A DNA stretch of 64,000 nucleotides from positions 62,001 through 126,000 of IMG/VR virus record IMGVR_UViG_3300042868_005134; one strand, written 5' to 3'. The translations under genes and the position numbers were made by a program. Under the pieces are notes generated by a model. That model worked only from the letters and a program-made list of their open reading frames with translations, searched no databases and had not been told where the DNA came from. Of this stretch, positions 16,913 to 32,492 are shown piece by piece. Positions within the stretch are counted from its first letter, which is position 1. The number at the start of each line of letters is the position of its first letter.

Positions 16913-16913
16913 G

Positions 16914-17285
16914 TTAATTCCATCTTAATAAAAACCAATCACGATCTTTTTGTTCTTTAAACCAAAACTTACGATTGTTCATATACCAACGCTGTAATGG
17001 CTGTGGGGTTAGATTTTTAGTCTCATTCCATAAACTGCCAGTCTCTCCAAACGTATCCAGACACCAAGTTTCCATGTCTAACCAACTGCCACCTTCGGGC
17101 TGCACTGTATAGTATTGATGGCCGTATACTTTGCCTTCTGCGCAAATTAATGCTTCAACAGGACGTTGTCGTATATCGTCAATTAGTCTGCTGTATGCAG
17201 TACGGCCTTTGTTTGCGTATTGATTTACCATAGCTTCGAATCCTGCTTGTTCGTGATTGTTTATAGCCATTTTAATTTGAACCAA
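16914..17285 (-). CDS. Hypothetical protein, FxL(K/R)W family
   Basis: Ends DRDWFLLRWN. Confidence 0.7.
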   Translation of the reverse strand: MVQIKMAINNHEQAGFEAMVNQYANKGRTAYSRLIDDIRQRPVEALICAEGKVYGHQYYTVQPEGGSWLDMETWCLDTFGETGSLWNETKNLTPQPLQRWYMNNRKFWFKEQKDRDWFLLRWN

Positions 17286-17662
17286 TTGACTTCCTTGTCA
17301 GTTGTCATGTAGATTTTAGTTTCACCAAACTCAGTGTGCCATGTCCAATGTGTGTTTAGACTAGACGCATCTGTTTTGGCTATTTCCAAATAACTTGAAC
17401 GTTCACAACTCATGCCCCAAGTCTGTATACACCAAGCTCTTACTTCGTTAAAGTCAGTTAGTCGTTTGGACAGTCTAACTTGTAGTCCCCCAATGACTGG
17501 TATGTTGTATCGCTCTGCTGTGATATCGGCTACATAATGGAACAGTTTACTGCCCGTGAATCGTGCGTCTGTTTTACGTATCTTTATTTTCATAGTGGAT
17601 ATTGTTTTATTAACTAGAACAATCGTTTGACCTAGTACCGTGATTGAACCTTTCATGACCAT
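17261..17662 (-). CDS. Hypothetical protein, FxL(K/R)W family
   Basis: Ends EVNWFKLKWL. Confidence 0.7.
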   Translation of the reverse strand: MVMKGSITVLGQTIVLVNKTISTMKIKIRKTDARFTGSKLFHYVADITAERYNIPVIGGLQVRLSKRLTDFNEVRAWCIQTWGMSCERSSYLEIAKTDASSLNTHWTWHTEFGETKIYMTTDKEVNWFKLKWL

Positions 17663-17934
17663 TTTAACGCAAACAATGTTGCGTATTTTTCTGTATAAAA
17701 AGTAAACACAGTATGCCTATCGGTAATTGAATGTCCGTTGATAGGATCAAACGTGGCCTTACGATAGGCAAAGTCAAAGTCAACACCTTGTACCAAACCT
17801 TGGCTTCTCAATGAGCGCACTATGTTCATGACTTCGTCTACTTTTTTGTGTAAAATGGCCACTTCAACTGCCAACTGTATGATCCTTTGTGAGCTGACAA
17901 ACCATTTGAAAACGTTCGAATGCTTTGCGTACAC
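17653..17934 (-). CDS. Hypothetical protein, FxL(K/R)W family
   Basis: Ends YATLFALKWS. Confidence 0.65.
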   Translation of the reverse strand: MYAKHSNVFKWFVSSQRIIQLAVEVAILHKKVDEVMNIVRSLRSQGLVQGVDFDFAYRKATFDPINGHSITDRHTVFTFYTEKYATLFALKWS

Positions 17935-18328
17935 TTGGATTTTGTAGTAGCTGTTCGGCTTCTAACATCATGGCCTTGACACCTGCTTCGGCACAGTCGT
18001 GTACACTAAGTCCATGGAGCGTGGCCAGTTCGTCACCAAATGCTTTAGCCAATTGTTCCCATGCTTGTTTTTGTGTAGGAGTTATTGGAGTTTGTTTCGG
18101 CCGTAGTTCGCTGGCCTTGCTAATGGCTCGACAGATAGCATCTTCGGCTACACGACCAGCTGCAATCATGGCAGCATAGTTTGGATCGATGTTGAATCTA
18201 CGGCTGGTGCCGCCTGGGTAACTCATAACCAAATGGTTACCTTTAGGAAAACTGTCTAGAAACTCGTTGTCGTACTCAGCAACTGGAACGTATTTGCGGC
18301 CTTGTTTTTCGTAATAGATTTTTTTCAT
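17864..18328 (-). CDS. Hypothetical protein
   Basis: YEKQGRKYVPV N-terminus; NPSVRKAFERF C-terminus. Confidence 0.75.
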   Translation of the reverse strand: MKKIYYEKQGRKYVPVAEYDNEFLDSFPKGNHLVMSYPGGTSRRFNIDPNYAAMIAAGRVAEDAICRAISKASELRPKQTPITPTQKQAWEQLAKAFGDELATLHGLSVHDCAEAGVKAMMLEAEQLLQNPSVRKAFERFQMVCQLTKDHTVGS

Positions 18329-18336
18329 ATGTCATA

Positions 18337-19104
18337 TCAATTGAGTTTACCCATGATATGATTATACATTATATCTTTGACTTTGTCAAGCCTAGCCTGT
18401 TTGGTTTGATAACCTAAAACCACAATGTAGTGTGTTTGACCCGCTTGTTCTACAACCATGCTGACACACCATCCAGCTGGAGTTGTCAATCCAGTCTTGC
18501 TGATCTGAACGTTTTTGAATTCGGTGAGCACAGGCTTGTTGGTATTGTCAAATTTTAACTCTGACAGTTTCTTTTTGTTTTCCCATGTGACACTGCTATT
18601 AATTCTAGTAGTAATATCTTTAATAATGGCAATCTTGTGTACTTGCTCAAGCAAGTTGAGCAAGTCTCTTGCGGTGCTCACATTGAGCTTGCTGAGTCCT
18701 GACGCATCATCAAAATGAGTATGTGTCATACCCAACTGAGTTGCCTTGGCATTCATGGCACCAATAAAGGCAGTTCTGCCGCCAGGATAATCCTGTGCCA
18801 AACTTTCAGCGGCACTGTTGTCACTGCGTACCAACATGGCTGTTAGTAGTTCCAGTCTGGTATAACTGCGTTTGGGCAACACAGTACTCCAACGATTGAT
18901 TAACTGTGCTCTGCTTTCCAAACTTAACCCTGACTCTAGTGCTACCACGGCAGTCATCAGCTTGGTAATGCTGGCAATGGGTCTAACTTGATCAGTGTTT
19001 TGATTGATTACAGCAGTGTGTTTGCTGTGATTAAAAACAAACACACTGGGCTCTGCGTGAACAGGCCCAGTGATGAGAGCTAGAAACAGTAACAAATAAC
19101 GCAT
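18337..19104 (-). CDS. D-alanyl-D-alanine endo/carboxypeptidase (peptidase S11, PBP7-like), secreted
   Basis: SxxK (ASITK), SxN (SDN), KTG; signal peptide. Confidence 0.92.
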   Translation of the reverse strand: MRYLLLFLALITGPVHAEPSVFVFNHSKHTAVINQNTDQVRPIASITKLMTAVVALESGLSLESRAQLINRWSTVLPKRSYTRLELLTAMLVRSDNSAAESLAQDYPGGRTAFIGAMNAKATQLGMTHTHFDDASGLSKLNVSTARDLLNLLEQVHKIAIIKDITTRINSSVTWENKKKLSELKFDNTNKPVLTEFKNVQISKTGLTTPAGWCVSMVVEQAGQTHYIVVLGYQTKQARLDKVKDIMYNHIMGKLN

Positions 19105-22531: not shown

Positions 22532-22771
22532 TTAACTCCTTATGCCTCGAATATCATCGTAACCGACCCTGATATAACTCACCCATTCAGAGCCAATCCT
22601 CATAGGTAGGTCCAAGTGTATGCTGACCCTGGCGCCTTCCAGTTCGTTCACCATGTTGTCTCCATAGGCTGTACCCACGTAGGGTATGCCTTGATACCGA
22701 CCCTCTACCCTCGCCCCAAAAGCATACCGAGGTTTGGGCCTATTGGCCTCAAAGTATTCTGCCAAGTTCAT
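22532..22771 (-). CDS. Hypothetical protein
   Basis: Coupled ORF. Confidence 0.7.
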   Translation of the reverse strand: MNLAEYFEANRPKPRYAFGARVEGRYQGIPYVGTAYGDNMVNELEGARVSIHLDLPMRIGSEWVSYIRVGYDDIRGIRS

Positions 22772-23103
22772 GCCAGCTCCCTAACATGCTTACACACGCC
22801 CCTGAATGTGTAGCCCTGGCAGGTACAGGTCTTCGTGCGTGTGTTCACTGTGTACACACTGCCATTGCTACCCGCTACCTCTTGAACATCAGGGTCCGCT
22901 TGAACACTGCCAACATCAAATGGGTCGGCCTCCAAGCGAACAAACTTGCGTCCCGAACGGCTGATGGTGATGGGTTTCTTAAACCAAAAGGGTGTCGTGG
23001 TGCCCTGACGCACATAGGCCCACATAGTGTTACCCTCAAAGAGGTACACATGATTGGCAGCGACGCTGTCTTTCCATGCCGTGACTTCTTGTACAGCTTC
23101 CAT
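22768..23103 (-). CDS. SWIM zinc-finger protein
   Basis: GSNG..YTV...CTCQGYTFRGVCKH. Confidence 0.8.
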   Translation of the reverse strand: MEAVQEVTAWKDSVAANHVYLFEGNTMWAYVRQGTTTPFWFKKPITISRSGRKFVRLEADPFDVGSVQADPDVQEVAGSNGSVYTVNTRTKTCTCQGYTFRGVCKHVRELA

Positions 23104-23112
23104 GTGACTCTT

Positions 23113-23328
23113 TCAATAACAGTTGTTTCTGATGTCAATGCCCTGTCGGCATAATGAATTTCTACGCTGTGCTTCATGCTCAAAATTGGGCAGTTGTTGC
23201 CAAGTTTCGCCGCAACGAATGCAGGGGTCATAGGGCTTGTAGCCCATGGAGGCCTTCTTTAAGCTGTAGTAGTCCACACTAGAACACCCAGCCAAAAGCA
23301 CCGCAACAGTAGTGATTAAGTATCTCAT
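23113..23328 (-). CDS. Small lipoprotein, leaderless first gene of the leftward operon
   Basis: Lipobox LAGC; promoter TTGACA(23363-23358)-17-TATAAT(23340-23335). Confidence 0.7.
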   Translation of the reverse strand: MRYLITTVAVLLAGCSSVDYYSLKKASMGYKPYDPCIRCGETWQQLPNFEHEAQRRNSLCRQGIDIRNNCY

Positions 23329-23378
23329 GTGCTAATTATACATGCTTATAGACAAGTTGTCAACAGTTAAATATGATT

Positions 23379-23552
23379 ATGAGCAACCAAACCAAAGAAC
23401 AAGAAGTCCAGGGTTTTCTAATGAAGATTCTCAATCACACGGGCAAACTGTACACTTTGGGCCTCATGATGGGCATTTTGACTAGACTGAGTAAGTCAGA
23501 CTACAACCTATATCAAGAGCTCAAACAGCGTAGTCAAGACATCAATAAATGA
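23379..23552 (+). CDS. 57-aa hypothetical protein (not in ORF track)
   Basis: MSNQTKEQEVQGFLMKILNHTGKLYTLG...; TAAATA just upstream. Confidence 0.5.
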   Translation: MSNQTKEQEVQGFLMKILNHTGKLYTLGLMMGILTRLSKSDYNLYQELKQRSQDINK

Positions 23553-23745
23553 CTAGATGAGCCCCGTAGCGTAACAATAGCCAAGTCAACTGCCGACAGG
23601 GCTCACACTCAATACGCCAAGTCCAATAACTATCTCCCACATAGACATAGGCGCCGGGACACATAACAATTGAATTGATTTGACAATAATGATAGATTTC
23701 ATCAATAACAGGATTGTTACTGGCAACGGTTACACATATACGCAT
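23542..23745 (-). CDS. Hypothetical protein, FxL(K/R)W-like C-terminus
   Basis: Ends LTWLLLRYG; TAAATA upstream. Confidence 0.55.
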   Translation of the reverse strand: MRICVTVASNNPVIDEIYHYCQINSIVMCPGAYVYVGDSYWTWRIECEPCRQLTWLLLRYGAHLVIY

Positions 23746-23764
23746 AGTAGCTGTATTTACAAAG

Positions 23765-24081
23765 AGACCCCGCTGCGCACCGGTTTGAACGCATGTAGTA
23801 GCAATCTATATAGTGAAGATTCGTATAGTGTCTAGAACTCATATAGCAGTAGTCTATATAGTGTAGAGATACACGGGCACTACGCTGACACATGCCAAGG
23901 CTGCGAAGCAGCCAGCGCCTGGCAGCGTTTTTGAGCACCTTATACACACAGTCAAACAGAGTACACACACAGCGCACAAAAGACCCCGCTGTGAGGTTCT
24001 GCTCGAACTAACACTACACGCACAGAGACCCCGCTGCGCGACCCGGGGTCCTCACACTATACAGCATGATAGACCCCGCTG
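23765..24081. repeat. Four direct repeats of AGACCCCGCTG (iteron-like)
   Basis: Copies at 23765, 23981, 24026, 24071. Confidence 0.85.
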
Positions 24082-24547
24082 TAGCTATCTAGGATTGAGC
24101 ACTGTGGCGGCATGATTAGAGTATTTGAACTATGCCTCTCTGCCCCACCGTGTTGAAAAATTTTTAACTCTAAGCCGCGGTATTCTGATTCGCGAAAGTG
24201 ACATGTATTCTAGAATCAGTCACACAAAATCACACTTTCTCACACTTTTAGACACTTTTTGGTCCCACCAACCGCACTCGTTGACTCTATACGCAAGGTG
24301 GTGGTAGTCTAGTTGCACTAGATCGCACTATAGAAGAATATAATTCACTATAGACAACTATAATTCAGTATAAAGCACTCTAATTCATATGCCAGTAGGG
24401 TGTCCACTGACTCAAACTGTCTTATACAGTGTTCAACCCAACACTACAGTAGAGTACTGTATACGCTGTAGTCACTATATAGACCTTTCACACTATATAG
24501 AATACTCTCGCACTGTGTGATATATACACTATACAAGGACTTACTAT

Positions 24548-24754
24548 ATGCGCTTTGAACCACTTGCTCACTTGACTTACTCAACTCATCAGGTATTCTT
24601 ATCAAGAGAACTGGAGAGGGGCCATATACACTGTTTCAAGTATGATGACAATCGCTGTGATTATCAAGTATTTGAGCCCCGGGATTGGGACGCGGGAAGT
24701 CATTATGTTCTCGAGGCGCTTCCCAAATGGGGATGGGGTTTTGTAGAGGATTAA
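24548..24754 (+). CDS. Hypothetical protein
   Basis: SD AAGGA upstream of ATG. Confidence 0.55.
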   Translation: MRFEPLAHLTYSTHQVFLSRELERGHIHCFKYDDNRCDYQVFEPRDWDAGSHYVLEALPKWGWGFVED

Positions 24755-24759
24755 TATTA

Positions 24760-24889
24760 TGTGGATAACCGTGTGGACAACCTTTATCCACAAGTTATTC
24801 AACTGTTATCCACATGTGAGCAAGCTGTGGATAACTTGAGTTTTAAATTTCTGCCCCAAATCCAAATAGTTATCCACAGCTTATCCACA
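24760..24889. promoter_or_regulatory. DnaA-box cluster (putative origin or DnaA sink)
   Basis: Perfect TTATCCACA/TGTGGATAA at 24760, 24784, 24806, 24826, 24870, 24881; one-mismatch box at 24772. Confidence 0.85.
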
Positions 24890-24944
24890 TAGCTACGCTC
24901 GCCCGCAGTCGCCGTCCACCCCCACTATGTTCGAACATGTCATT

Positions 24945-24973
24945 ATTATAACACGTTTTGAGCATTCAGTCAA
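24945..24973 (-). promoter_or_regulatory. Leftward sigma70 promoter firing into the DnaA-box cluster
   Basis: TTGACT(24973-24968)-17-TATAAT(24950-24945). Confidence 0.75.
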
Positions 24974-25066
24974 CTCGATCGCAAAGACCCTGATCGCAGT
25001 GTGGGTATCTTTTTGAGTTGACTGTTTGGCTCTTTTGCAGTATAATTAGTTTTTAAGGGAGCTAAA

Positions 25067-25207
25067 ATGCAAACATACAAACAGCAACTCGACATCGCCA
25101 TGCTACAATTACAAGCATTAATTGACGAAGAATTTGAGTACAACGAAAGTATACAAGACGCTTTTAATGCGCTCGCTTGTGCGCTAGACGAAGTTGTTGC
25201 GGAATAA
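25067..25207 (+). CDS. 46-aa acidic early protein (not in ORF track)
   Basis: MQTYKQQLDIAMLQLQALIDEEFEYNESIQDAFNALACALDEVVAE; promoter plus SD GGGAGC. Confidence 0.7.
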   Translation: MQTYKQQLDIAMLQLQALIDEEFEYNESIQDAFNALACALDEVVAE

Positions 25208-25265
25208 CAACATGCGAATGCGGGGCCCGGTTGACATTTTGGCTAGACCTTGCTATAATACACAC

Positions 25266-25595
25266 ATGACAAAGACAAAACGAACAGCAAGAAGCGACAG
25301 CAACTACGTGATCTACGCTATGACTAGCGAGCGTGGGGACTCATACGTGGGCTTGACACGCAAGGGCTCAGTCACAGTGAACAAGGCAGTACTAGAGCGC
25401 TGGCGCAAGCACAAGAGCCGAGCACGTAACGAGAACCGCATGTGGGCTCTCTATGTGTATCTCAAGACTGGCGGGCTTGACATGACTTGGACGCACACTG
25501 TCATAGACGTCATACGTGGCCGCAAAGAGGCTTATGCCTACGAGCGCGAGCTGGTCAAAATGATAGAGCCCGAGCTCAACGACCAGTACTTGTAA
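25266..25595 (+). CDS. GIY-YIG-like nuclease, leaderless
   Basis: VIYAM...YVGLT...ERWRKH...E..L...P.LN; ATG begins 7 nt after TATAAT. Confidence 0.75.
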   Translation: MTKTKRTARSDSNYVIYAMTSERGDSYVGLTRKGSVTVNKAVLERWRKHKSRARNENRMWALYVYLKTGGLDMTWTHTVIDVIRGRKEAYAYERELVKMIEPELNDQYL

Positions 25596-25669
25596 AAGCC
25601 TTATGGTTGACAGGGTCTCGGAATCCTGTTATAATTAAGGCTACAGTAAACAACTAAGGAGCGAAACTT

Positions 25670-25879
25670 ATGCGTGAAATGACTAGCAAACTGATTGCAA
25701 TGATGGACGAAGGCCTCATCAGTGCAGAAGCTGTGGCAGAGATGGCCCTGGCTTACATGAGCGAAGATGACGTGGCAGAGATGATGCGAGCTAACGACAT
25801 CCTCCTGGACGAAGAAGACGAGGATGACGGACAGCCCGACGAAGCCCAGGAGTGGGAATCTTTTGACGCAGACTGCTAA
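25670..25879 (+). CDS. Acidic early hypothetical protein
   Basis: Promoter plus SD GGAGCGAA; ends DGQPDEAQEWESFDADC. Confidence 0.85.
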   Translation: MREMTSKLIAMMDEGLISAEAVAEMALAYMSEDDVAEMMRANDILLDEEDEDDGQPDEAQEWESFDADC

Positions 25880-25889
25880 GGAGATGGCT

Positions 25890-26033
25890 ATGCAAGCATG
25901 GGACGTCTTACGCAATGGCAAGATCATTGACACTGTATTCTACGACAAGGACTGTACACTGTGGTATGTGCGCCAGGGGCTCATTGAGCACGATGGCTAC
26001 CCGGTTGACATTGTAGTCCAAAAGGCAGTATAA
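25890..26033 (+). CDS. Early hypothetical protein
   Basis: MQAWDVLRNGKIIDTVFY; SD AAGGAG. Confidence 0.7.
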   Translation: MQAWDVLRNGKIIDTVFYDKDCTLWYVRQGLIEHDGYPVDIVVQKAV

Positions 26034-26061
26034 TATACACTTACACACACTAGGAGCGCAT

Positions 26062-26346
26062 ATGAAAGTCAATCACACACTGTACATCTACAAGGCAGAC
26101 AAGCGGTGCAAAAGCGGTGAACGTCTGTTGTCAACCACTGTATGGCAGAACAGAGATGCCGCTGAGATGGCTCGTGAGGTGCGTGAGTTAGAGTACCAAA
26201 CGTGGCCCAAGCGGCAGGGCTACCGCATGGAGTTTGTGCCCACAATGAAGACTGTGAAGAACTTGATGACGGGTGTGGAGATAGAGATAGCACATGACAC
26301 TCCTCGCAGTTGCGACCCATCAAGCGAACTCTACTGGAGCATGTGA
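26062..26346 (+). CDS. Early hypothetical protein
   Basis: Promoter plus GGAGCG; ends TPRSCDPSSELYWSM. Confidence 0.85.
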   Translation: MKVNHTLYIYKADKRCKSGERLLSTTVWQNRDAAEMAREVRELEYQTWPKRQGYRMEFVPTMKTVKNLMTGVEIEIAHDTPRSCDPSSELYWSM

Positions 26347-26546
26347 TGGTCAAATGGGAATGTCAGATGTTCTACAAGGACAAGCTCTATTCAGGACACT
26401 ATTGGACTGATGAGCTTAGTCTGGCCCGTGCCCGCAGAAAGGTTGCGGAATTACAACGATATCATCCTGCCATGCGATTCACATTGACTGATTGGCAAAA
26501 AGGCAGTATAATTGACTTACGCAAACAAACAAAGGAGCTGGCATGA
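26346..26546 (+). CDS. Early hypothetical protein
   Basis: TGATG coupling to the upstream gene. Confidence 0.6.
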   Translation: MVKWECQMFYKDKLYSGHYWTDELSLARARRKVAELQRYHPAMRFTLTDWQKGSIIDLRKQTKELA

Positions 26547-26923
26547 CACGCTATTACGACACACTGGCAGAATTTGAAAGAGACGGCTATGACATCATCG
26601 TGGACAAAAGCTATGAAGACCTCAACCCTCGCGACTGCTTCGACGACTCAGTCTGTGACATTGACGAGATCATCAAGGACATCGATCGCGGCCACCTCGA
26701 ATGGTTCATGCTCAGGGTCCGGGTACTGGTCGAGGGACTTGAGTTGGGCTCAGCTTACCTCGGCGGATGCTTATACGAGGACCCCCGAGAGATCCTTACT
26801 GACGGGACTGCCGAGGACTTCATTGCTGAGGCGATGGTAGAGGCCAAGAGCCAAGTGTACAGACTGAGCCGCAAGTTCACTGAGTTGAGCTATGCTGTGG
26901 ATCGTGAAGGTGTCACGGTATAA
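26543..26923 (+). CDS. Early hypothetical protein
   Basis: Promoter plus GGAGC; GSAYLGGCLY. Confidence 0.85.
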   Translation: MTRYYDTLAEFERDGYDIIVDKSYEDLNPRDCFDDSVCDIDEIIKDIDRGHLEWFMLRVRVLVEGLELGSAYLGGCLYEDPREILTDGTAEDFIAEAMVEAKSQVYRLSRKFTELSYAVDREGVTV

Positions 26924-27013
26924 CCCTGACAGCAGTAGGGTCTTTGCTTTTTGAGTTGACACTCTGCCCAAAAGGCAGTATAATAAACACTTAAACAGCA
27001 AAAAGGAAACGCA

Positions 27014-27274
27014 ATGTCTACAGTGTATAACGCAAACACAGCAAAAGCTAAAGTAATTTATTACAAAGACAAAGAGACATACAAGATTATCTTTGCTTTT
27101 AATGTACACAAAAAAGTAAAAGATAACGGGGACATTGTACACATGTTCCCTACACAAGCAAAATGCGCTTATGTAAGCGGAGATATTAACTACGAGACAC
27201 TACAAGCAGACAAAGAGCGCATTATAGAGCAAGCTAAAAAAACAATGCGCACAAACAGCGTGGAGTTTGTATAA
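27014..27274 (+). CDS. Early hypothetical protein
   Basis: Promoter plus SD AAGGAA. Confidence 0.8.
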   Translation: MSTVYNANTAKAKVIYYKDKETYKIIFAFNVHKKVKDNGDIVHMFPTQAKCAYVSGDINYETLQADKERIIEQAKKTMRTNSVEFV

Positions 27275-27365
27275 CCCTTCAGCCCGTAAGGGCTTTTTAT
27301 AGCACACTTGACATTTTGACTAGAGTGCGCTATAATAAGTTTTTAACAAGCACTAGGAGCGAACT

Positions 27366-27767
27366 ATGCAAATCTTTACTACACTACACACCGACGGCAT
27401 GGGCTATTGGAGTCGCACTGCTACAGCAGTAGACATTACCAAATTGGACTTGCAGTACATTAACAACGAGAGAGACTTCGGCGAGCTGTGTGTATACTTT
27501 ACAACAGACGAGCTGGGATGCAATTGCTGGGAAACTGAAGTTGACGGTCTCATTTACACAGACAAACTGTTTATGACTGAGCTACGTGCTTATTTGCAAA
27601 CAATTGGTTTCTCTGAAGCAGAAGCCGACGACGTTAGCTACAGCGAGCAGGGCATGCAGGGAGACGAGTACGTTAGCTGTGACGTGGGAGCTGTGTTTAT
27701 AGCGGGCTTGGAGCGTTTGGACCCTGCGCATGTTGCAGCAGTATACAAGGAGTGCGAGGATGTTTAA
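27366..27767 (+). CDS. Early hypothetical protein
   Basis: Promoter plus GGAGCGAA; GLIYTD and YSEQGMQG motifs. Confidence 0.85.
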   Translation: MQIFTTLHTDGMGYWSRTATAVDITKLDLQYINNERDFGELCVYFTTDELGCNCWETEVDGLIYTDKLFMTELRAYLQTIGFSEAEADDVSYSEQGMQGDEYVSCDVGAVFIAGLERLDPAHVAAVYKECEDV

Positions 27768-27945
27768 CGACAAGCAAAACAAACTGATGCTGGCGGCTGT
27801 CGAAGCATTACACAAAGCAGACGCATTAATGCAAGAGGCACTAGGTGCCAGCGACGAGTGCTACGACTTACACTGCGGCATCGAAAGCATGGCCGACGAC
27901 CTGCTTGAGCTTATACAAGAGAACAACCCTGCGGAGATGGAATGA
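27760..27945 (+). CDS. Early hypothetical protein
   Basis: Start MFNDKQ with SD. Confidence 0.7.
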   Translation: MFNDKQNKLMLAAVEALHKADALMQEALGASDECYDLHCGIESMADDLLELIQENNPAEME

Positions 27946-28178
27946 CACGTACACAAATAGACGAGGCACTACAGTGGGCGGGCGCTGCAGCAATCATTGC
28001 GGGCCATGTGCTTAACGCTGTAGGGCCCAGCATGTACCCCTACAATATTGCTGTGTTCGCTGTGGGCACAGTACTATTTTTGACGTGGGCCGCGCGAGTG
28101 CGCAATGTACCGCAGGCCGTTGTCAACGTTGTAGCATTGACCATTGGGCTAGTAGGGTTATACAACGCATACAGTTGA
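27942..28178 (+). CDS. Small three-TM membrane protein
   Basis: Hydrophobic; YPYNI motif. Confidence 0.75.
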   Translation: MTRTQIDEALQWAGAAAIIAGHVLNAVGPSMYPYNIAVFAVGTVLFLTWAARVRNVPQAVVNVVALTIGLVGLYNAYS

Positions 28179-28230
28179 CATTTTGGGCAGGGCCTGTTAT
28201 AATACATACATAGCAACAAAGGAGCACACG

Positions 28231-28386
28231 ATGAGAGACGTAATACTAGCAAAGCTGGCAGAGGTAGAAGACTTGCTACAGGCTGCAACGCTGGACGGCG
28301 AGAGCTTGACAGAGATGGCGTGCTTTAGCGAACTAGAAGGTGCGCTTAACACACTAGTACAAGCGGTTGACTACTACGTAGATTGA
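28231..28386 (+). CDS. Early hypothetical protein
   Basis: Start MRDVIL after promoter plus GGAGC. Confidence 0.75.
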   Translation: MRDVILAKLAEVEDLLQAATLDGESLTEMACFSELEGALNTLVQAVDYYVD

Positions 28387-28421
28387 TGCTATAATTAAGA
28401 CTTATTAACAAGGAGCGAACC

Positions 28422-28688
28422 ATGTTAGACATTAGTAAAATTGCCAAAGTGTACAGCGGCAAGCTGGGCACCTGTATGTGCGGATGCGCCGGCAAGTACA
28501 GCTACACGGCAGAAGGTGCTGTGTCAGACAACCCGGGCTATGACGTAAGCGACAGCGTGAACGAGCGCAGTGTACGCATTATCGCTGGCAAGGTCATTGG
28601 CAATGCCAATGCAGTCAACGACGGCAACTTTGTTTATGTAGAGGATGGCAATCGCATCCGTGTTGTTTATTTTAAGGAGCAAGCATGA
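28422..28688 (+). CDS. Early hypothetical protein with CMCGCAG motif
   Basis: Promoter plus GGAGCGAA. Confidence 0.85.
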   Translation: MLDISKIAKVYSGKLGTCMCGCAGKYSYTAEGAVSDNPGYDVSDSVNERSVRIIAGKVIGNANAVNDGNFVYVEDGNRIRVVYFKEQA

Positions 28689-28939
28689 AAGTATCCCAAC
28701 TCATAGAGCAGTTGCAGGACATGAATCCCGAAGCAGACGTACACTTTGCCTATAACTATGGCGACCACTGGCGTACAGAGGTAGCCCCTAGTGTAGGCCG
28801 TGTTGACGAGGGTGCAGTAGTCTACAGCGAGTACCACCGCATGGACAAGATACTTGACGCTGACGGCGACTGCGAGTTTGACGATGACGGCAATGAAGTT
28901 GTCGATGAGTCCACACGCCGCGTAGTGGTATTGAGTTGA
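28685..28939 (+). CDS. Early hypothetical protein
   Basis: MKVSQLIEQLQ..NPEADV; GGAGC. Confidence 0.8.
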   Translation: MKVSQLIEQLQDMNPEADVHFAYNYGDHWRTEVAPSVGRVDEGAVVYSEYHRMDKILDADGDCEFDDDGNEVVDESTRRVVVLS

Positions 28940-28992
28940 CATAGTGAGCAAGTGAACGTATACTATAGACTAAGTTAACAAAAGGAGCAGAG

Positions 28993-29247
28993 ATGATTAC
29001 AGCAGACACACTTGAAGCATTGACTACATACAGCCCACAGTTCCTAACTCGTGCGGCACAGAACGCAGGATACAAGGGCCCGGAGTTCAGCTCTTGTAAG
29101 TTCATTGGCATTACCAATGGTGGTCAGTTCTGCTACACTGCTGTCTTTCATGTGAAAGGCGGCACTGACAGCACAAAGATCTTCTTGTCCTATGACCATG
29201 CTGAGGACAAGGTTATTGCTGACTACCATTTGACAGAGTTGGCATAA
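28993..29247 (+). CDS. Early hypothetical protein
   Basis: Promoter plus GGAGC. Confidence 0.8.
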   Translation: MITADTLEALTTYSPQFLTRAAQNAGYKGPEFSSCKFIGITNGGQFCYTAVFHVKGGTDSTKIFLSYDHAEDKVIADYHLTELA

Positions 29248-29264
29248 GGCGTTATAATTGAAGC

Positions 29265-29440
29265 ATATTAAGTAAAAAGGTTACCTACACCGTTAGGGAC
29301 TGTAAGAGAGGAGCACAGAGGGCACTCTACGCAATCTTACAGTCCATGAAATAGGGCAATAATGCCTGGAGACGCGGCGGAGTATGTAGGAAGTAATGAC
29401 CGTCAAGGCCCGTGAGAGATGCGCTTACAGGTAGACATAG
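29265..29440 (+). ncRNA. Candidate structured ncRNA occupying a promoter cassette
   Basis: Promoter 29230-29258 with no ORF; 11-bp stem 29297-29307/29335-29345; outer stem CCTACA/TGTAGG. Confidence 0.55.
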
Positions 29441-29501
29441 ATTGACAATGGTTCCTTTTTATGTTATAATACATACATCAACAACGCAATAGGAGCGAAC
29501 T

Positions 29502-29711
29502 ATGTCAGCATTGGTAGAAGGCAAAGTGGTTAATGTTGGAGACTACGTGGGCTTTAAATCAGACATCGAGCAGTACGGCAAAATTGTAGAGATCAAACAG
29601 AGCTACATGGGTGCCAGCCTAGTACTAGAGAACGCAAGTGGCTTCTCTGGGGGCTACATAGGCGGGCAAACAATAACCACAGAGCTAGCCAGGGATTGTT
29701 GGATTGATTGA
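29502..29711 (+). CDS. Early hypothetical protein (SH3-like pattern)
   Basis: VGDYVGFKSDIEQYGKI; GGAGCGAA. Confidence 0.85.
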   Translation: MSALVEGKVVNVGDYVGFKSDIEQYGKIVEIKQSYMGASLVLENASGFSGGYIGGQTITTELARDCWID

Positions 29712-29764
29712 CACAACGCCTAATTCATTGTATAATATACACTTACACACACTAGGAGCACACA

Positions 29765-30202
29765 ATGGGAACACGAAGCACAATCGCATTGGAATTCGCA
29801 GACGGCACAGTAGAGCAAGTCTACTGCCACTGGGACGGCTATCTTGAGCACAACGGCAAAATCCTTGCTGAACACTATAGCGACCCGTTTGTTCTGCAGA
29901 AGCTGATTGACTTGGGTGATATGTCCAGCTTGGGCGAGCGCATTGGCACACAGCACGCCTTTGAAAAAGCTCCCGAAGGCGAGTGTACTTTCTACAAGCG
30001 AGATCGCAACGAAGACGGGTGCGGCAAGAAGTCGTTCGTTGACTTCCAGGACTATTTGGCTCATCACCAGTATGAGGAATACGACTACATCCTGCGCAAC
30101 ATTAACGGCAAGGCCACTTGGTTCGTATCGGATCATGACGGAGCCTATGTTGAATTGACGCAGGCTATTATGGACAAACAAGACAACGAGGCCACAGCAT
30201 GA
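29765..30202 (+). CDS. Conserved phage hypothetical protein
   Basis: MGTRS...YCHWDGY...EEYDY. Confidence 0.85.
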   Translation: MGTRSTIALEFADGTVEQVYCHWDGYLEHNGKILAEHYSDPFVLQKLIDLGDMSSLGERIGTQHAFEKAPEGECTFYKRDRNEDGCGKKSFVDFQDYLAHHQYEEYDYILRNINGKATWFVSDHDGAYVELTQAIMDKQDNEATA

Positions 30203-30255
30203 CAGGTTTCAACAGCAAACGGGCCATGGCCCAGGACAAACTTAAGGAGCAGGAT

Positions 30256-30432
30256 ATGAGCAAAATGGCAGAACTGGCATACGACATTGAGCAACTGTAC
30301 ATTGACGGCTTCAACAGTCGAGCAATCGCAGAGGAACTTGGTTGCCCACTTGAGATTGTATTGGGTGCGCTGGCTGAGATGAATGTGGAGGATGCTGAGC
30401 CCTTTGATCCTTACGCAACTGTAAACAGTTAA
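30256..30432 (+). CDS. Small HTH-like early protein
   Basis: Start MSKMAEL after AAGGAGC; SRAIAEELGCPLEIV. Confidence 0.75.
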   Translation: MSKMAELAYDIEQLYIDGFNSRAIAEELGCPLEIVLGALAEMNVEDAEPFDPYATVNS

Positions 30433-30433
30433 T

Positions 30434-30500
30434 GCCACCGTCCGGGCCACTAGGCCTTGCAACTCGCCCTGGCACTTCGCCCGGACTGTGTGGCTTTTTT
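30434..30500 (+). terminator. Long hairpin terminator with large internal insert
   Basis: GCCAC-CGTCCGGGC...GCCCGGAC-TGTGTGGC followed by TTTTTT. Confidence 0.65.
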
Positions 30501-30569
30501 ACAACACTGTGATTTGACACTTTGAGCTTTTGGTTGTATAATTAACACATAGACAGCAAGGAGCACACA

Positions 30570-30713
30570 GTGAAGATTGTAATCAAAGTACCAAAGAAGC
30601 ACAGAGAGCATTTTGTTCTCTTTGCCCAAAATACACCCTTCAAGCAAAAGGTTGTGGAGAGCAAGATCAAATACAAACGTCAACCCAAACACCGAGGCAA
30701 ACACAATGATTGA
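30570..30713 (+). CDS. 47-aa basic peptide, ArfA-like (not in ORF track)
   Basis: GTG start after promoter plus GGAGC; MKIVIKVPKKHREHFVLFAQNTPFKQKVVESKIKYKRQPKHRGKHND. Confidence 0.65.
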   Translation: MKIVIKVPKKHREHFVLFAQNTPFKQKVVESKIKYKRQPKHRGKHND

Positions 30714-30924
30714 GATCCAAGGATTTAGCCCTAAGCAAAAGGCACTGGCAGACATCATGTGGGCCATCAGCACCAAGGAAGGCGTTGATGCGTTCATCGC
30801 AACCCTGCCAAAGGCAGAGCGCCGTGAGTGCGAATTGGTTAAAGAGATGTTGGTCTTGGCCTTCCTGGACGATATTGTTAATACCCAGGAAGCTGACATG
30901 GTTATTGACAAGTTTCGTCTTTGA
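30706..30924 (+). CDS. Early hypothetical protein
   Basis: Start MIEIQGFS. Confidence 0.75.
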   Translation: MIEIQGFSPKQKALADIMWAISTKEGVDAFIATLPKAERRECELVKEMLVLAFLDDIVNTQEADMVIDKFRL

Positions 30925-30965
30925 TGTTATAATACATACTTACACACAGCAACTAGGAGCAACAC

Positions 30966-31235
30966 ATGAAAGCACTACAAGAGTTCATTGCCCAGAAGAA
31001 TCACTGGAATTCATTCTTCAAAGGCGAGCAGTATGAGATTGCCACTGCCAAAGGTCGTCAGCGTGTGGCAGACATGATTGATTCAGCTTTGAGCCCAGAG
31101 AACTTGACCTGCGATGGCGAACTGAGCCGCACAGAAGTCAATCGACGCTACAAGGAACTGATGACTGCGGCCAAGCAGTTGAAGAAGTTGGATCCTAAGG
31201 TTTCTTTCTACGAATACGATGCGGAGGTGGCATGA
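30966..31235 (+). CDS. Early hypothetical protein
   Basis: LSPENLTCDGE motif; promoter plus GGAGC. Confidence 0.85.
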   Translation: MKALQEFIAQKNHWNSFFKGEQYEIATAKGRQRVADMIDSALSPENLTCDGELSRTEVNRRYKELMTAAKQLKKLDPKVSFYEYDAEVA

Positions 31236-31408
31236 TGCCAGTGGCGTTGGAAAGCAACATCCCAATCGAAGAGCTCGAGTTGGTTCGAGCTGAGTATCGC
31301 AACAAAGGCATCAGGATCCGAGTGCGGTATCGTGGTCCTAGACATGATTGGATGCGATTGTATTGTTTGAAGCGGAACGCCCGTGCGTTCAGTGTTTATC
31401 TTAAATAA
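31232..31408 (+). CDS. 58-aa basic protein (not in ORF track)
   Basis: MMPVALESNIPIEEL...RVRYRGPR...AFSVYLK; SD GGAGG. Confidence 0.7.
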   Translation: MMPVALESNIPIEELELVRAEYRNKGIRIRVRYRGPRHDWMRLYCLKRNARAFSVYLK

Positions 31409-31417
31409 GGAGCAACT

Positions 31418-32044
31418 ATGCCTAATTGGTGCAACAACTCAGTGGTTCTAAAACACAACGACCCAGCCATGATTGAACGGGCCCGCAAGGCTTTCAATGG
31501 CGAAGGCCTGCTACAAGAGTTCATTCCAGTGCCGCAGGCTCTGCGTGACACGGTGTCAGGCAGTATGGGCGAGGACAAGCGAGAAGCACACGAAGCACAA
31601 CAAAAAGCCAATGTGGAACAGTATGGCTACGCTAACTGGTATGACTTCTGTGTCAACGAGTGGGGTACCAAGTGGGAGATTGGTGCTGATGGTAATCCAG
31701 CACAGGACATCCCGGGTGGATTGATGTTGGGCTTTGATTCAGCATGGAGTCCTCCTATTGCGGCTTACGAGAAGCTCTTGGAGATGGGCTTCGAGATCGA
31801 AGCCATGTATTACGAACCAGGCATGGCTTATGCCGGCGTCTGGGACAATGGCCACGATGACTACTACGAGTATGGTGGACTGGACAGCGCAGGCATTGCT
31901 GAAACTTTGCCCGCAGAACTAGACGAGGCCTTTGGCATTAGCGAAAGTGTCGCAGAGTGGGAAGCAGAGCAAGAAGAAGAAAACATCGACATCGATCTTG
32001 ATGGCGGGTTGAGTGCTATTAACGAACAGGAACAACAAAAATGA
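31418..32044 (+). CDS. DUF1281/YubB-like ferredoxin-fold protein
   Basis: MPNWCNN, WYDFC..WGTKW, FDSAWSPP, YYEPG. Confidence 0.8.
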   Translation: MPNWCNNSVVLKHNDPAMIERARKAFNGEGLLQEFIPVPQALRDTVSGSMGEDKREAHEAQQKANVEQYGYANWYDFCVNEWGTKWEIGADGNPAQDIPGGLMLGFDSAWSPPIAAYEKLLEMGFEIEAMYYEPGMAYAGVWDNGHDDYYEYGGLDSAGIAETLPAELDEAFGISESVAEWEAEQEEENIDIDLDGGLSAINEQEQQK

Positions 32045-32172
32045 AGACTAATCGACAACTTAACAAAGACCATGCGGGTCGCGAACTGCTTAAGGTTCGT
32101 CCCAAACAACCAGCTTGGGATTTCAAATCATTAGAGGCCGTGATTCGTCAGTGGATCACGCAGGCTAAATGA
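32041..32172 (+). CDS. 43-aa hypothetical peptide (not in ORF track)
   Basis: ATGA overlaps at both ends. Confidence 0.55.
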   Translation: MKTNRQLNKDHAGRELLKVRPKQPAWDFKSLEAVIRQWITQAK

Positions 32173-32426
32173 GCAGGCTAGCACTCTACGGTAGACCATA
32201 TGTGGTGTTCGATGCTACCAATCGAGAGCACAGACAATGGTTCGCCAACTTCAACAAGTCGGGTGCGTGGGGCAACTGTCCGGTTCGTTTTGTAGTTGAT
32301 GACGACCATGGCGATTTGATTACCATGATTCAAAGGCATTTGATCCAGTTCTATGTGGACAAAGAGTTCGCCAAGGATCGGGTGCGCCCAAAAAGTGTTG
32401 TGAAAACACAACGGAAAAAGACTTAG
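32169..32426 (+). CDS. Hypothetical protein
   Basis: RPYVVFDATNREHR...WGNCPVRF. Confidence 0.75.
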   Translation: MSRLALYGRPYVVFDATNREHRQWFANFNKSGAWGNCPVRFVVDDDHGDLITMIQRHLIQFYVDKEFAKDRVRPKSVVKTQRKKT

Positions 32427-32492
32427 GATTGAGTTGACAGGTTAGGGTTTTGGCAGTATAATTACTACTTCAACAACGCAATAGGAACTAAG

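What the first reader, a model, noticed from the sequence alone, without database searches (positions are those of the whole stretch)
24760..24889. Dense cluster of perfect host DnaA boxes in a T4-like phage
Seen: six perfect TTATCCACA boxes in both orientations (24760, 24784, 24806, 24826, 24870, 24881) plus a one-mismatch box (24772) within 130 bp, at the point where gene orientation flips. Established: T4-type phages initiate via R-loops and recombination using their own helicase and primase, without DnaA; DnaA-box clusters in bacteria act as oriC, datA-type sinks or DARS. Inference: either a host-DnaA-dependent first-round origin, or a DNA sponge that titrates DnaA to block host chromosome initiation as phage copy number rises.
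Basis: partly seen in the sequence, partly recalled or inferred. Interest (0 to 1): 0.8.

Follow-up and report, generated by a model that had tools for sequence, protein, structure and literature searches.

The report
Host DnaA-binding array in jumbo phage
A giant lake-water phage carries a real, evolutionarily conserved cluster of binding sites for the host's replication initiator DnaA at the head of its early genes. The cluster lacks the features of a replication origin and more likely acts as a DnaA-dependent barrier to transcription, much like an untested cluster long known in T5-like phages.

Summary
Six perfect TTATCCACA boxes and one 1-mismatch box lie in 24760-24889, with none elsewhere in 64 kb (0.7 expected).

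The genome is a ~383 kb freshwater jumbo phage. It is distantly T4-like, and its nearest cultured relatives are the PA5oct group. It is found in at least 18 lake metagenome runs, so it is not a chimera or a captured host oriC.

Related phage lineages carry arrays at the same place. One box with its flanks is identical in five lineages whose surrounding DNA is 46% identical. Box number, spacing and orientation turn over, but "double boxes" with 2-3 bp spacers, the unit E. coli DnaA binds in vivo, dominate.

The array lies inside a conserved untranslated leftward early transcription unit. Relatives without an array have an intrinsic terminator at that exact spot. There is no AT-rich unwinding element, no excess of DnaA-trios and no IHF site, so oriC-type and datA-type membership are not supported.

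My best reading (about 0.35) is a DnaA nucleoprotein barrier, or conditional terminator, at the early-region boundary. An origin auxiliary site, a DnaA sink and a T5-type entry stop remain possible. The closest precedent is the untested DnaA-box cluster at the T5 pre-early border.

The parts
24760..24889 (.). DnaA-box array as a whole: 6 perfect boxes, 1 one-mismatch box and 1 decayed box
   Evidence: Arrays occupy the same position in L024, L081, L123, L136, L140, L144, L146, L154, L182, L050, L032 and L132.
24760..24780 (-). Left 'double box': TGTGGATAA-ccg-TGTGGACAA (perfect box plus 1-mismatch box, 3 bp spacer)
   Evidence: Spacers of 2-3 bp are the in vivo binding unit of E. coli DnaA (PMC11317965).
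24784..24792 (+). Perfect DnaA box
   Evidence: It reads TTGTCCACA in the close relative L123.
24806..24814 (+). Perfect DnaA box
   Evidence: It reads TTATTCACA in L123.
24815..24823 (-). Decayed box (TGTGAGCAA), formerly the partner of the 24826 box
   Evidence: It aligns with a perfect TGTGGATAA in L024, L050 and L032.
24822..24836 (-). Invariant box with flanks, AAGCTGTGGATAACT
   Evidence: It is identical in all five aligned lineages, while mean column identity is 46%.
24870..24889 (+). Right 'double box': TTATCCACA-gc-TTATCCACA (2 bp spacer)
   Evidence: The same 20-mer occurs in at least 120 IMG/VR contigs.
24910..24923 (.). Conserved C-rich element CGCCGTCCACCCCC (a G-rich leader on the leftward transcript)
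   Evidence: It is conserved in relatives with and without the array.
24927..24938 (.). Perfect palindrome ATGTTCGAACAT at the predicted start of the leftward transcript; operator-like
   Evidence: Read directly from the sequence. GTTCGAAC is conserved in relatives.
24945..24973 (-). Leftward sigma70-type promoter (TTGACT-17-TGnTATAAT) that reads into the array
   Evidence: An equivalent leftward promoter is present in L081, L024, L032, L154, L182, L149 and L198.
25018..25046 (+). First rightward early promoter (TTGACT-17-TATAAT)
   Evidence: The GGTTGACAGTTTGGC...TATAAT block is conserved in all five lineages.
24548..24754 (+). Small conserved gene (68 aa) that ends 5 bp before the array and converges on the leftward promoter
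   Evidence: tblastn finds homologues in L024, L081, L123, L140, L144, L146, L149, L154, L182 and L198. No family match.
25266..25595 (+). Small GIY-YIG-domain early gene that co-occurs with upstream DnaA boxes across the family
   Evidence: Pfam PF01541 at 23.4 bits against a 22.6 cutoff. In the unbiased set, 20 of 45 copies have at least one perfect box within 800 bp upstream.
24121..24312 (.). Conserved untranslated DNA blocks to the left of the array: TTTGAACTATGCC, GATTCTGAC, 10-bp-phased CACACTTTT repeats (24219-24262) and GACTCTATACGCAAGGTGG
   Evidence: There is no conserved RNA structure. In L164 and L186 these blocks directly abut perfect boxes.

Best explanation
What it is (confidence about 0.85): a selected, cis-acting array of high-affinity binding sites for the host initiator DnaA. 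It is an accessory module that some lineages of a freshwater jumbo-phage family carry at the head of their early-gene block.

How it most likely works (confidence about 0.35): DnaA molecules bind cooperatively to the 'double boxes' and form a nucleoprotein barrier. This barrier sits between two converging transcription units. One is the small + gene 24548-24754. The other is a conserved, untranslated transcript made from the strong leftward early promoter 24973->24945. The barrier stops elongating host RNA polymerase, taking the place of the bidirectional intrinsic terminator that array-less relatives have at the same spot. The boundary of early transcription then depends on how much DnaA is available. 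That could work as a timer or sensor, as phage copy number rises or the host's DnaA pool changes.

Shown here: the boxes, their conservation and turnover, their position inside the leftward transcription unit, the array-or-terminator alternation, and the lack of origin and datA hallmarks.

Inferred: DnaA binding, the transcription block, and any timer function.
For: 1. Six perfect boxes lie in 130 bp against 0.7 expected in 64 kb.
2. AAGCTGTGGATAACT is invariant in 5 lineages whose untranslated DNA averages 46% identity.
3. Between close relatives, boxes switch between perfect and 1-mismatch forms and one box arises by an 11 bp insertion, yet about 7-8 sites are kept. This indicates selection on occupancy rather than geometry.
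4. Most boxes form tandem pairs 11-12 bp start to start. E. coli DnaA binds in vivo almost only to pairs with 2-3 bp spacers (PMC11317965).
5. The array starts about 50 nt downstream of the predicted start of a leftward sigma70 promoter. That promoter is conserved in relatives and has no coding gene behind it.
6. Nine array-bearing lineages have no genuine intrinsic terminator between the small gene and the C-rich element. Both array-less lineages with the same scaffold (L149 group, L198) have one there.
7. In more distant relatives, 1-3 boxes sit at the end of a tRNA transcription unit just before the next strong promoter.
8. DnaA bound within transcribed DNA is described as a roadblock (PMC11317965). 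DnaA binding in datA attenuates read-through from the upstream tRNA operon (PMC10950094).
9. Metatranscriptome contig depth dips over the array relative to both flanks: 26 / 11 / 48. This is weak evidence because the DNA run dips too.
10. Origin and datA hallmarks are absent.
Against: No binding or transcription data exist for this phage, and its host is unknown.

An intrinsic terminator is simpler to evolve than a DnaA-dependent one, so a conditional function has to be assumed.

The array-or-terminator alternation rests on 9 against 2 lineages that are not phylogenetically independent.

L050 has an array but no detectable leftward promoter. In L032 a second cluster lies upstream of a leftward promoter, not downstream.

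The RNA contigs carry no strand or end information, and the depth dip over the array is also seen in DNA.

The adjacent conserved DNA-level repeat blocks would also suit an origin or another DNA-level hub.
Confidence: 0.35

Rival explanations
1. Auxiliary DnaA site of a phage replication origin. The untranslated hub at 24.0-25.0 kb is the first-round origin. DnaA bound at the array helps opening or helicase loading, possibly together with the untranslated G-rich leftward transcript acting as an R-loop primer. This would be a T4-type origin with a ColE1/pBR322-like DnaA assist.
For: - The commonest established use of DnaA boxes on extrachromosomal replicons is as origin auxiliaries (general knowledge).
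- The array lies in a long untranslated, repeat-rich hub at a divergence of transcription.
- Conserved DNA-level blocks and 10-bp-phased iteron-like repeats lie next to it, with no RNA structure.
- A strong promoter with a conserved non-coding G-rich leader reads into it.
- The phage encodes a DnaB-family helicase and a primase.
- The '----++' two-block orientation recalls the two opposed DnaA subcomplexes of oriC.
- An auxiliary role would tolerate loss of the array in some relatives.
Against: - No 40-bp stretch with AT of at least 0.75 lies within 150 bp of the array, and the right flank is 65-67% GC.
- DnaA-trio/BUS patterns are not enriched (6/21 against 21% random).
- Box orientation relative to the flanks is not conserved.
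- The array is absent in relatives with the same scaffold and in PA5oct.
- GC skew tracks gene orientation.
- T4-type replisomes do not need DnaA (general knowledge).
- In T5, similar boxes lie far from the mapped origins (10.1101/866236).
Confidence: 0.25
2. DnaA sink, or a datA-like inactivator. The array titrates DnaA, or catalytically inactivates DnaA-ATP, as phage genomes accumulate. This blocks host chromosome initiation or de-represses DnaA-controlled host genes such as those for nucleotide synthesis.
For: - The evolutionary pattern fits selection on total binding capacity with free geometry.
- High-affinity double boxes dominate.
- datA itself lies downstream of a tRNA operon and is crossed by read-through transcription, as are the box pairs in L134, L170, L190 and L197.
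- There is no unwinding element.
Against: - All boxes are at one locus, with none elsewhere in 64 kb.
- Only 6-8 sites per ~383 kb genome.
- No IHF site, the defining datA co-factor site, is present in any of 12 arrays.
- The position is fixed at a regulatory hub across lineages.
- The benefit is unclear for a virulent phage whose early genes include a GIY-YIG nuclease.
- The array is absent in many relatives.
Confidence: 0.15
3. T5-type DNA-entry stop or membrane anchor. Membrane-associated DnaA catches the array as the DNA enters and pauses or anchors it, so that the early block is expressed first. This is Davison's hypothesis for T5.
For: The parallel with T5-like phages is striking. Both have paired boxes with 2-3 bp spacers in both orientations. 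Both place them in an untranslated region over 1 kb long that is rich in repeats and inverted repeats. In both, that region borders a block of small early genes with very strong sigma70 promoters.
Against: - The T5 idea is itself untested (PMC10644984).
- The terminase is T4-type, which suggests headful packaging without fixed ends.
- No terminus-like gap is seen at the far end of the early block, where genes converge without a gap at about 41.3 kb.
- Physical ends could not be examined, because only contigs were available.
Confidence: 0.07
4. The 9-mers are bound by a phage-encoded protein, not by host DnaA.
For: The host is unknown, and the genome is large and mostly unannotated. Only 64 of about 383 kb was examined.
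Against: The motif is the exact universal DnaA consensus, including R4-like flanks. It is arranged in the 2-3 bp double-box unit specific to DnaA dimers. The tolerated variants (TTGTCCACA, TTATTCACA) are one-mismatch variants of the consensus; that such variants still bind DnaA is my own knowledge, not tested here. No DnaA-like protein was seen among the window proteins scanned.
Confidence: 0.05
5. Artefact: a chance cluster, an assembly chimera, or a recently captured host oriC fragment.
For: None found.
Against: - 0 of 100 shuffles reach 6 boxes.
- The same stretch is held by at least 18 lake-water metagenome runs and by a 383 kb contig.
- Syntenic arrays occur in at least 10 diverged phage lineages.
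- The flanks are phage genes and phage promoters, with no dnaA, dnaN or gid genes.
Confidence: 0.01

Closest known systems
DnaA-box cluster in the untranslated 'injection stop signal' region of T5-like phages (Demerecviridae); Heusterspreute 1987 as cited in Davison 2020, bioRxiv 10.1101/866236; BF23 paper PMC10644984
   Same: It is a virulent phage. About 7-8 consensus or near-consensus boxes occur mostly as pairs with 2-3 bp spacers, in both orientations. They lie in a long untranslated region rich in repeats and inverted repeats, at the border of a block of small early genes driven by very strong host promoters. Function is experimentally untested in both cases.
   Different: There is no sequence homology beyond the boxes. 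T5 boxes are embedded in fixed inverted repeats with a constant 52 bp spacer and lie in a terminal repeat. Here the geometry is fluid, the array lies inside a leftward transcription unit, distribution across the family is patchy, and genome ends are unknown.
E. coli datA (DnaA-box cluster that promotes DnaA-ATP hydrolysis)
   Same: It is a cluster of high-affinity DnaA boxes without an unwinding element. It is crossed by read-through transcription, and DnaA binding there attenuates that transcription (PMC10950094). In some relatives the boxes follow tRNA genes, as datA follows glyVXY.
   Different: No IHF-binding site was found in any array. It is phage-borne, and DnaA-ATP hydrolysis could not be tested.
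DnaA/DnaA-box transcription roadblocks (cited as refs 27-29 in PMC11317965; datA box 2 in PMC10950094)
   Same: The boxes lie inside a transcribed region downstream of a strong promoter, and there is no alternative terminator.
   Different: Known cases involve one or two boxes. Here there are 6-9, in both orientations, and no transcript ends have been mapped.
Bacterial oriC DnaA-oligomerisation region with basal unwinding system (PMC8287927)
   Same: Both have tandem double boxes with 2 bp spacers and two oppositely oriented box blocks.
   Different: There is no adjacent AT-rich unwinding element, DnaA-trios are not enriched, the flank is GC-rich, and no dnaA/dnaN neighbourhood is present.
DnaA-stimulated transcriptional activation of ori-lambda (Szalewska-Palasz 1998, as summarised in PMC8203912)
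   Same: It is a phage element in which DnaA bound near an early promoter affects early transcription and thereby replication.
   Different: Lambda has a few weak sites and its own initiator (O/P). Here there is a dense array of perfect boxes and no O-like initiator has been identified.

Membership tests
oriC-type DnaA-dependent origin (DnaA boxes + BUS + DUE) | Cluster of DnaA boxes including tandem pairs | tested here: met
oriC-type DnaA-dependent origin (DnaA boxes + BUS + DUE) | AT-rich DNA unwinding element adjacent to an outward-facing box | tested here: not met
   No 40-bp window with AT of at least 0.75 lies within 150 bp. AT of the right flank is 0.33-0.35 in most lineages.
oriC-type DnaA-dependent origin (DnaA boxes + BUS + DUE) | At least 3 DnaA-trios (NAN) within 16 bp of a box (rule of PMC8287927) | tested here: inconclusive
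   6 of 21 array edges pass against 21% of random 60-mers. The rule is too permissive to discriminate, and there is no enrichment.
oriC-type DnaA-dependent origin (DnaA boxes + BUS + DUE) | Replication starts there and depends on DnaA | not testable with these tools
   Only assembled contigs were available. GC skew follows gene orientation.
datA-type DnaA-inactivating / titrating locus | Cluster of DnaA boxes without an unwinding element | tested here: met
datA-type DnaA-inactivating / titrating locus | Single IHF-binding site essential for activity (PMC10950094) | tested here: not met
   No WATCAANNNNTTR site independent of the boxes was found in the arrays of 12 lineages. Caveat: this is the E. 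coli consensus and the host is unknown.
datA-type DnaA-inactivating / titrating locus | Stimulates DnaA-ATP hydrolysis / delays host initiation | not testable with these tools
   Needs biochemistry or flow cytometry.
DARS-type DnaA-reactivating sequence | Core of three boxes in a fixed orientation, plus IHF/Fis sites (DARS2) | not tested
   I had no tool-derived definition of the core geometry. The absence of an IHF site argues against a DARS2-like element.
T5-type DnaA-box cluster at the pre-early border | Boxes mostly in pairs with 2-3 bp spacers, in both orientations | tested here: met
   T5 description.
T5-type DnaA-box cluster at the pre-early border | Embedded in a long untranslated region rich in direct and inverted repeats, bordering small early genes with strong host promoters | tested here: met
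T5-type DnaA-box cluster at the pre-early border | Located in a long terminal repeat at the first-step-transfer boundary | not testable with these tools
   No raw reads, so no genome ends.
T5-type DnaA-box cluster at the pre-early border | Sequence homology of the region to T5-like phages | tested here: not met
   Only box-level matches at E of about 1-5.
DnaA roadblock / DnaA-dependent terminator | Boxes inside a transcribed region downstream of a promoter | tested here: met
   The promoter is predicted and conserved. RNA contigs cover the region. The promoter has not been shown experimentally.
DnaA roadblock / DnaA-dependent terminator | Transcripts end at the boxes in a DnaA-dependent way | not testable with these tools
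   Contig depth dips over the array, but it dips in DNA too.
T4-type R-loop origin | Promoter followed by a downstream DNA unwinding element (my own knowledge of oriF/oriG) | tested here: not met
   The promoter is present, but the downstream 40 bp are GC-rich.
Iteron-type theta origin with auxiliary DnaA boxes | Iterons plus an adjacent initiator gene plus an AT-rich region | tested here: inconclusive
   10-bp-phased CACACTTTT repeats (24219-24262) are conserved, and an AT-rich tandem 20-mer lies at 24326-24365. No initiator gene was recognised, and the AT-rich segment is specific to the window.

The most novel reading that the evidence does not exclude
DnaA double-box arrays are an unrecognised, widespread class of cis-element in virulent phages. 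They are placed at the boundaries of early regions or near genome termini. Examples seen here are T5-like phages, T7-like Klebsiella Przondoviruses, this freshwater jumbo-phage family, and other uncultured phages with arrays next to terminase genes.

Through these arrays a phage would read or exploit the host's DnaA pool. In this family the array would convert a constitutive terminator into a DnaA-conditional one for an untranslated, G-rich early transcript. That transcript's blocked 3' end or R-loop could then prime first-round replication, giving a hybrid of a T4-type R-loop origin and a DnaA-assisted origin.
Probability: 0.2. Interest if true: 0.8.

Novelty: new variant of a known kind. Interest (0 to 1): 0.55.

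Why it matters
DnaA is the universal bacterial replication initiator. Virulent phages with their own T4-type replisome are not supposed to need it. Even so, a perfect and strongly conserved DnaA-binding array sits at the control hub of the early region of a giant freshwater phage, and similar arrays occur in T5-like, T7-like and other phages.

The function of the T5 boxes has been an open question since 1987. This family adds comparative leverage: the array alternates with a terminator, the geometry is fluid, and the double-box unit is fixed. That narrows the options and suggests concrete tests that can be run in T5 or with cloned fragments.

If phages use DnaA occupancy as a barrier, a timer or an origin aid, that would be a new link between the host replication state and phage early development.

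Tried and rejected
- DNA similarity to deposited phages found no match for 23800-25800 (near) or 24300-25300 (distant).
- Rfam and tRNA scans of the region found no credible RNA family.
- GC skew as evidence for an origin was rejected, because the skew follows gene orientation and flips back at about 37-41 kb.
- PA5oct, the nearest cultured relative, has an analogous untranslated gap with an RNA-seq-supported lncRNA but no box cluster in 40 kb.
- A 14-mer left-hand marker with 2 mismatches was too unspecific to anchor relatives.
- Weak or relaxed boxes (TTWTNCACA) in the phased repeats gave only two 1-mismatch hits, so they are not convincingly enriched.
- The leftward transcript folds well as RNA (z = -4.4), but only because inverted boxes pair. 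L032 and L050 have one-orientation arrays, so this structure is not the conserved feature.
- The left untranslated segment has no conserved RNA structure and no covariation.
- The BUS/DnaA-trio test showed no enrichment, and the IHF site scan found nothing.
- The idea that the GIY-YIG neighbour is a T4 endonuclease II (DenA) homologue is unsupported: there was no tblastn match in phages and no PDB match.
- Laying reads to find genome ends gave only Logan contigs, so there is no information on ends or strand.
- The intergenic/intragenic classification of boxes used too permissive an ORF mask and gives only modest support.
- The lambda paper PMC22473 is not held.
- The AAA ATPase 36113-37024 was considered as a DnaC-like loader, but it is the T4-type nrdC.10 homologue.

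Full report
**1. Observation.**
The window holds exactly six perfect TTATCCACA sites, at 24760(-), 24784(+), 24806(+), 24826(-), 24870(+) and 24881(+). Dinucleotide-preserving shuffles expect 0.70 in 64 kb, and none of 100 reaches six. A one-mismatch site, TTGTCCACA, lies at 24772(-). With the relaxed consensus TTWTNCACA the same 300 bp remains the densest spot in the window.

**2. What genome this is.**
There is no nucleotide match in deposited phages. The large terminase (56674-58269) is 55.6% identical to that of the Pseudomonas jumbo phage PA5oct group and about 43% to Rak2-like jumbo phages. The window also encodes:
- a gp41/DnaB-like helicase (41293-42774)
- a Toprim primase (43829-44806)
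- a UvsX-like recombinase (52301-53410)
- an SF2 helicase (48934-50433)
- an nrdC.10-type AAA ATPase (36113-37024)

'T4-like' is therefore right only in the distant sense. A 383,411 bp IMG/VR contig carries a 99-100% identical copy. At least 18 lake-water metagenome runs hold 85-100% of the sampled words of 23000-27000. This is a real, recurrent freshwater jumbo phage and not an assembly chimera.

**3. Local anatomy.**
To the right of the array lies a 16 kb block of small + strand genes. It is driven by an extraordinary density of perfect TTGACA-17-TATAAT promoters, six perfect ones in 2.5 kb. Its GC content is higher than the rest of the window. Metatranscriptome contigs cover this block deeply, leave 22684-23971 empty, and contrast with a DNA run that is even throughout.

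The block opens with a back-to-back divergent promoter pair: leftward 24973->24945 and rightward 25018-25046. The leftward promoter has no coding gene behind it. Its predicted transcript starts in a perfect palindrome (ATGTTCGAACAT, 24927-24938). It then runs through a conserved G-rich leader, the complement of CGCCGTCCACCCCC at 24910-24923. About 50 nt from its start it enters the DnaA-box array. It then meets the 3' end of a small conserved + strand gene (24548-24754).

Further left, from 23.75 to 24.55 kb, is an untranslated, repeat-rich stretch.

**4. Relatives.**
An exact search for the right-hand double box found at least 120 viral contigs. Eight of them are true relatives of this phage by protein and DNA similarity, and they carry arrays of 2-7 boxes.

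In an alignment of the untranslated regions of five lineages, mean identity is 46%. Even so, AAGCTGTGGATAACT (24822-24836) is invariant.

That sample was selected by the boxes themselves. I therefore fetched 80 relatives with a profile of an early gene 5 kb away.
- They contain 90 perfect boxes in 966 kb, against 7.4 expected.
- Arrays of four or more boxes occur in 9 of the 80 loci, or 7 without the window's own phage. Of 34 loci with at least 7 kb upstream, only 3 have three or more clustered boxes.
- The array is therefore an accessory, patchily distributed module.
- PA5oct has an analogous untranslated gap, with an RNA-seq-annotated lncRNA, but no boxes.

**5. How the array evolves.**
The window and its close relative L123 are 79% identical here. 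Individual boxes switch between perfect and one-mismatch forms (TTGTCCACA, TTATTCACA), and an 11 bp insertion creates a new box. The total stays at 7-8 sites.

Across lineages the number (4-9), spacing and orientation all vary. Tandem pairs 11-12 bp start to start dominate. A common order is a block of one orientation followed by a pair of the other ('----++', 8 of 12 lineages, with the window as a shuffled variant).

Stringer et al. showed by ChIP-seq and mutagenesis that E. coli DnaA binds in vivo almost only to pairs of boxes 2 or 3 bp apart (PMC11317965). The phage arrays are built from exactly this unit. I take this as strong indirect evidence that host DnaA is the ligand.

**6. Position relative to transcription.**
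Many relatives share the divergent promoter pair. Lineages that share the scaffold of small gene, C-rich element and leftward promoter fall into two groups.
- Nine have an array between the small gene and the C-rich element and no genuine intrinsic terminator there.
- Two (the L149 group and L198) have no boxes, and have bidirectional terminator hairpins at that spot.

In more distant relatives the leftward promoter drives ordinary genes. There, one to three boxes lie at the end of a tRNA transcription unit, just before the promoter of the same small GIY-YIG gene that follows the array in the window. In the unbiased set, 20 of 45 copies of that gene have at least one perfect box within 800 bp upstream. 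A second cluster in L032 abuts another leftward promoter.

Boxes are thus found at boundaries between early transcription units.

**7.
Origin:
- No AT-rich stretch lies within 150 bp.
- The flank next to the right double box is 65-67% GC in most lineages.
- The published BUS rule (box, spacer of at most 16 bp, at least 3 NAN trios; PMC8287927) is met at 6 of 21 array edges, against 21% of random 60-mers.
- GC skew follows gene orientation.
- Orientation is not conserved, and the array can be lost.

Sink or datA-like element:
- The free geometry fits this idea.
- No IHF site, which is essential for datA (PMC10950094), is present in any of the 12 arrays.
- All sites are at one locus.

Neither hypothesis is excluded. 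Neither gains specific support.

**8. Best explanation.**
The array is a selected docking site for host DnaA. My preferred mechanism, at about 0.35, is a DnaA nucleoprotein barrier. It would end the untranslated leftward early transcript and the converging small-gene transcript, in place of the intrinsic terminator used by array-less relatives. This would make the boundary conditional on DnaA availability.

Precedents are DnaA roadblocks (cited in PMC11317965) and the attenuation of tRNA read-through by DnaA bound in datA (PMC10950094).

The sequence anatomy and the comparative pattern are shown. Binding, blocking and any timer role are inferred.

**9. Rivals.**
- **Origin auxiliary site (0.25).** The neighbouring conserved DNA blocks have no conserved RNA structure and include 10-bp-phased, iteron-like repeats. 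The G-rich untranslated leader could form an R-loop.
- **DnaA sink (0.15).**
- **T5-type entry stop (0.07).**
- **A phage protein as the ligand (0.05).**
- **Artefact (0.01).**

**10. Closest known.**
T5-like phages carry about eight DnaA boxes, in pairs with 3 bp spacers. They lie in the untranslated repeat region at the border of the pre-early genes (10.1101/866236). I saw them directly in Salmonella phage bombadil. Their function has never been tested (PMC10644984).

The jumbo-phage array is an independent, non-homologous example with different geometry and context. I found no paper linking DnaA boxes and jumbo phages. I therefore rate it a new variant of a known kind.

**11. Wider pattern (partly followed).**
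Dense arrays also occur in unrelated contigs labelled viral. None is flanked by dnaA or dnaN, and some lie next to phage genes such as a large terminase. T7-like Klebsiella phages carry a double box at the start of the record, apparently in the terminal repeat. This suggests a broader class of phage elements that has not been studied.

Noticed in passing
window 25000-37000 (e.g. 25231-25259, 25607-25635, 26005-26034, 26956-26984, 27308-27336); L050 3679-12691: There is an extreme density of perfect 12/12 sigma70 promoters with a conserved extended form (GGTTGACAGTTTGGC...TATAAT), roughly one per small gene: 13 perfect ones in 10 kb of L050. The block also has higher GC (0.47-0.49) than the rest of the window (0.36-0.44).
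   Followed up: partly
window 24927-24938 and 24910-24923: A perfect 12-bp palindrome, ATGTTCGAACAT, sits at the predicted start of the leftward early transcript. It is followed by a conserved C-rich element, and both are conserved in relatives with or without the DnaA array. It looks like an operator plus a G-rich non-coding leader.
   Followed up: partly
window 24121-24312; L024 2239-2440; L081 6230-5990; L154, L149, L198, L050: Conserved untranslated DNA blocks include three or four CACACTTTT repeats phased at 10 bp, which look iteron-like, bent, or like weak DnaA boxes. No conserved RNA structure was found. In L164 and L186 these blocks directly abut perfect DnaA boxes and a tRNA promoter.
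   Followed up: partly
window 23806, 23854 (one orientation) and 24473, 24491 (the other): The motif CACTATATAG occurs only four times in 64 kb. The copies form two inverted pairs flanking a ~600 bp untranslated core. Its function is unknown.
   Followed up: no
window 23760-24082 and 24326-24365: There are four copies of a GACCCCGCTG-containing repeat, some forming strong hairpins such as 24027-24050. There is also a window-specific AT-rich tandem 20-mer (CACTATAGAnnAnTATAATT, two copies).
   Followed up: no
L125 (PA5oct NC_071039.1) locus 16900-18710, record 245979-247789: PA5oct has an analogous 1.8 kb gene-poor gap at a strand flip upstream of a small-gene block. A 'putative lncRNA' is annotated there from RNA-seq, but there are no DnaA boxes.
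   Followed up: partly
window 25266-25595 and homologues in L128-L201: A small early protein consisting of little more than a GIY-YIG domain (109 aa) is conserved across the family and statistically linked to upstream DnaA boxes. It has no match in deposited phages or in the PDB. It might be a host-DNA nuclease in the manner of T4 EndoII, but that is unsupported.
   Followed up: partly
L032 5126-5160: A second cluster of three perfect DnaA boxes lies 20 bp upstream of the -35 of a perfect leftward promoter inside the early block of a relative.
   Followed up: no
L206 (Klebsiella phage 175002, PP357452.1) 2-23; hits H97, H98: T7-like Klebsiella Przondoviruses carry a perfect double DnaA box (TGTGGATAAcccTGTGGATAA) at the very start of the record. 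Relatives show two places per record, which suggests it lies in the direct terminal repeat.
   Followed up: partly
L053 3835-4250 and L008 300-720 (contigs of 159 kb and 95 kb); L113 2752-2876; L103/L005/L110: Unrelated contigs labelled viral have arrays of 6-11 perfect boxes in long untranslated regions, and none is flanked by dnaA or dnaN. One array lies directly upstream of a large terminase gene. Another group lies next to a GP88-family gene. L053 and L008 are the same element in opposite orientations.
   Followed up: partly
one search hits H71, H74, H79, H110, H111: Small microviruses from rodent faeces ('bajarodmic virus', Microvirus mar39) carry DnaA double boxes in unannotated DNA.
   Followed up: no
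window 42793-43743: A carbamoyltransferase-like (Nol-type) gene sits between the replicative helicase and primase genes.
   Followed up: no
window 7767-9200: A multidomain lysis-type protein combines a GDSL lipase/acylhydrolase-like domain, a peptidoglycan-binding domain and a cell-wall hydrolase domain.
   Followed up: no
window 33713-33959: A tRNA cluster (Leu-TAA, Met-CAT, Arg-TCT) lies inside the early block. In several relatives, DnaA boxes lie immediately downstream of the homologous tRNA genes.
   Followed up: partly
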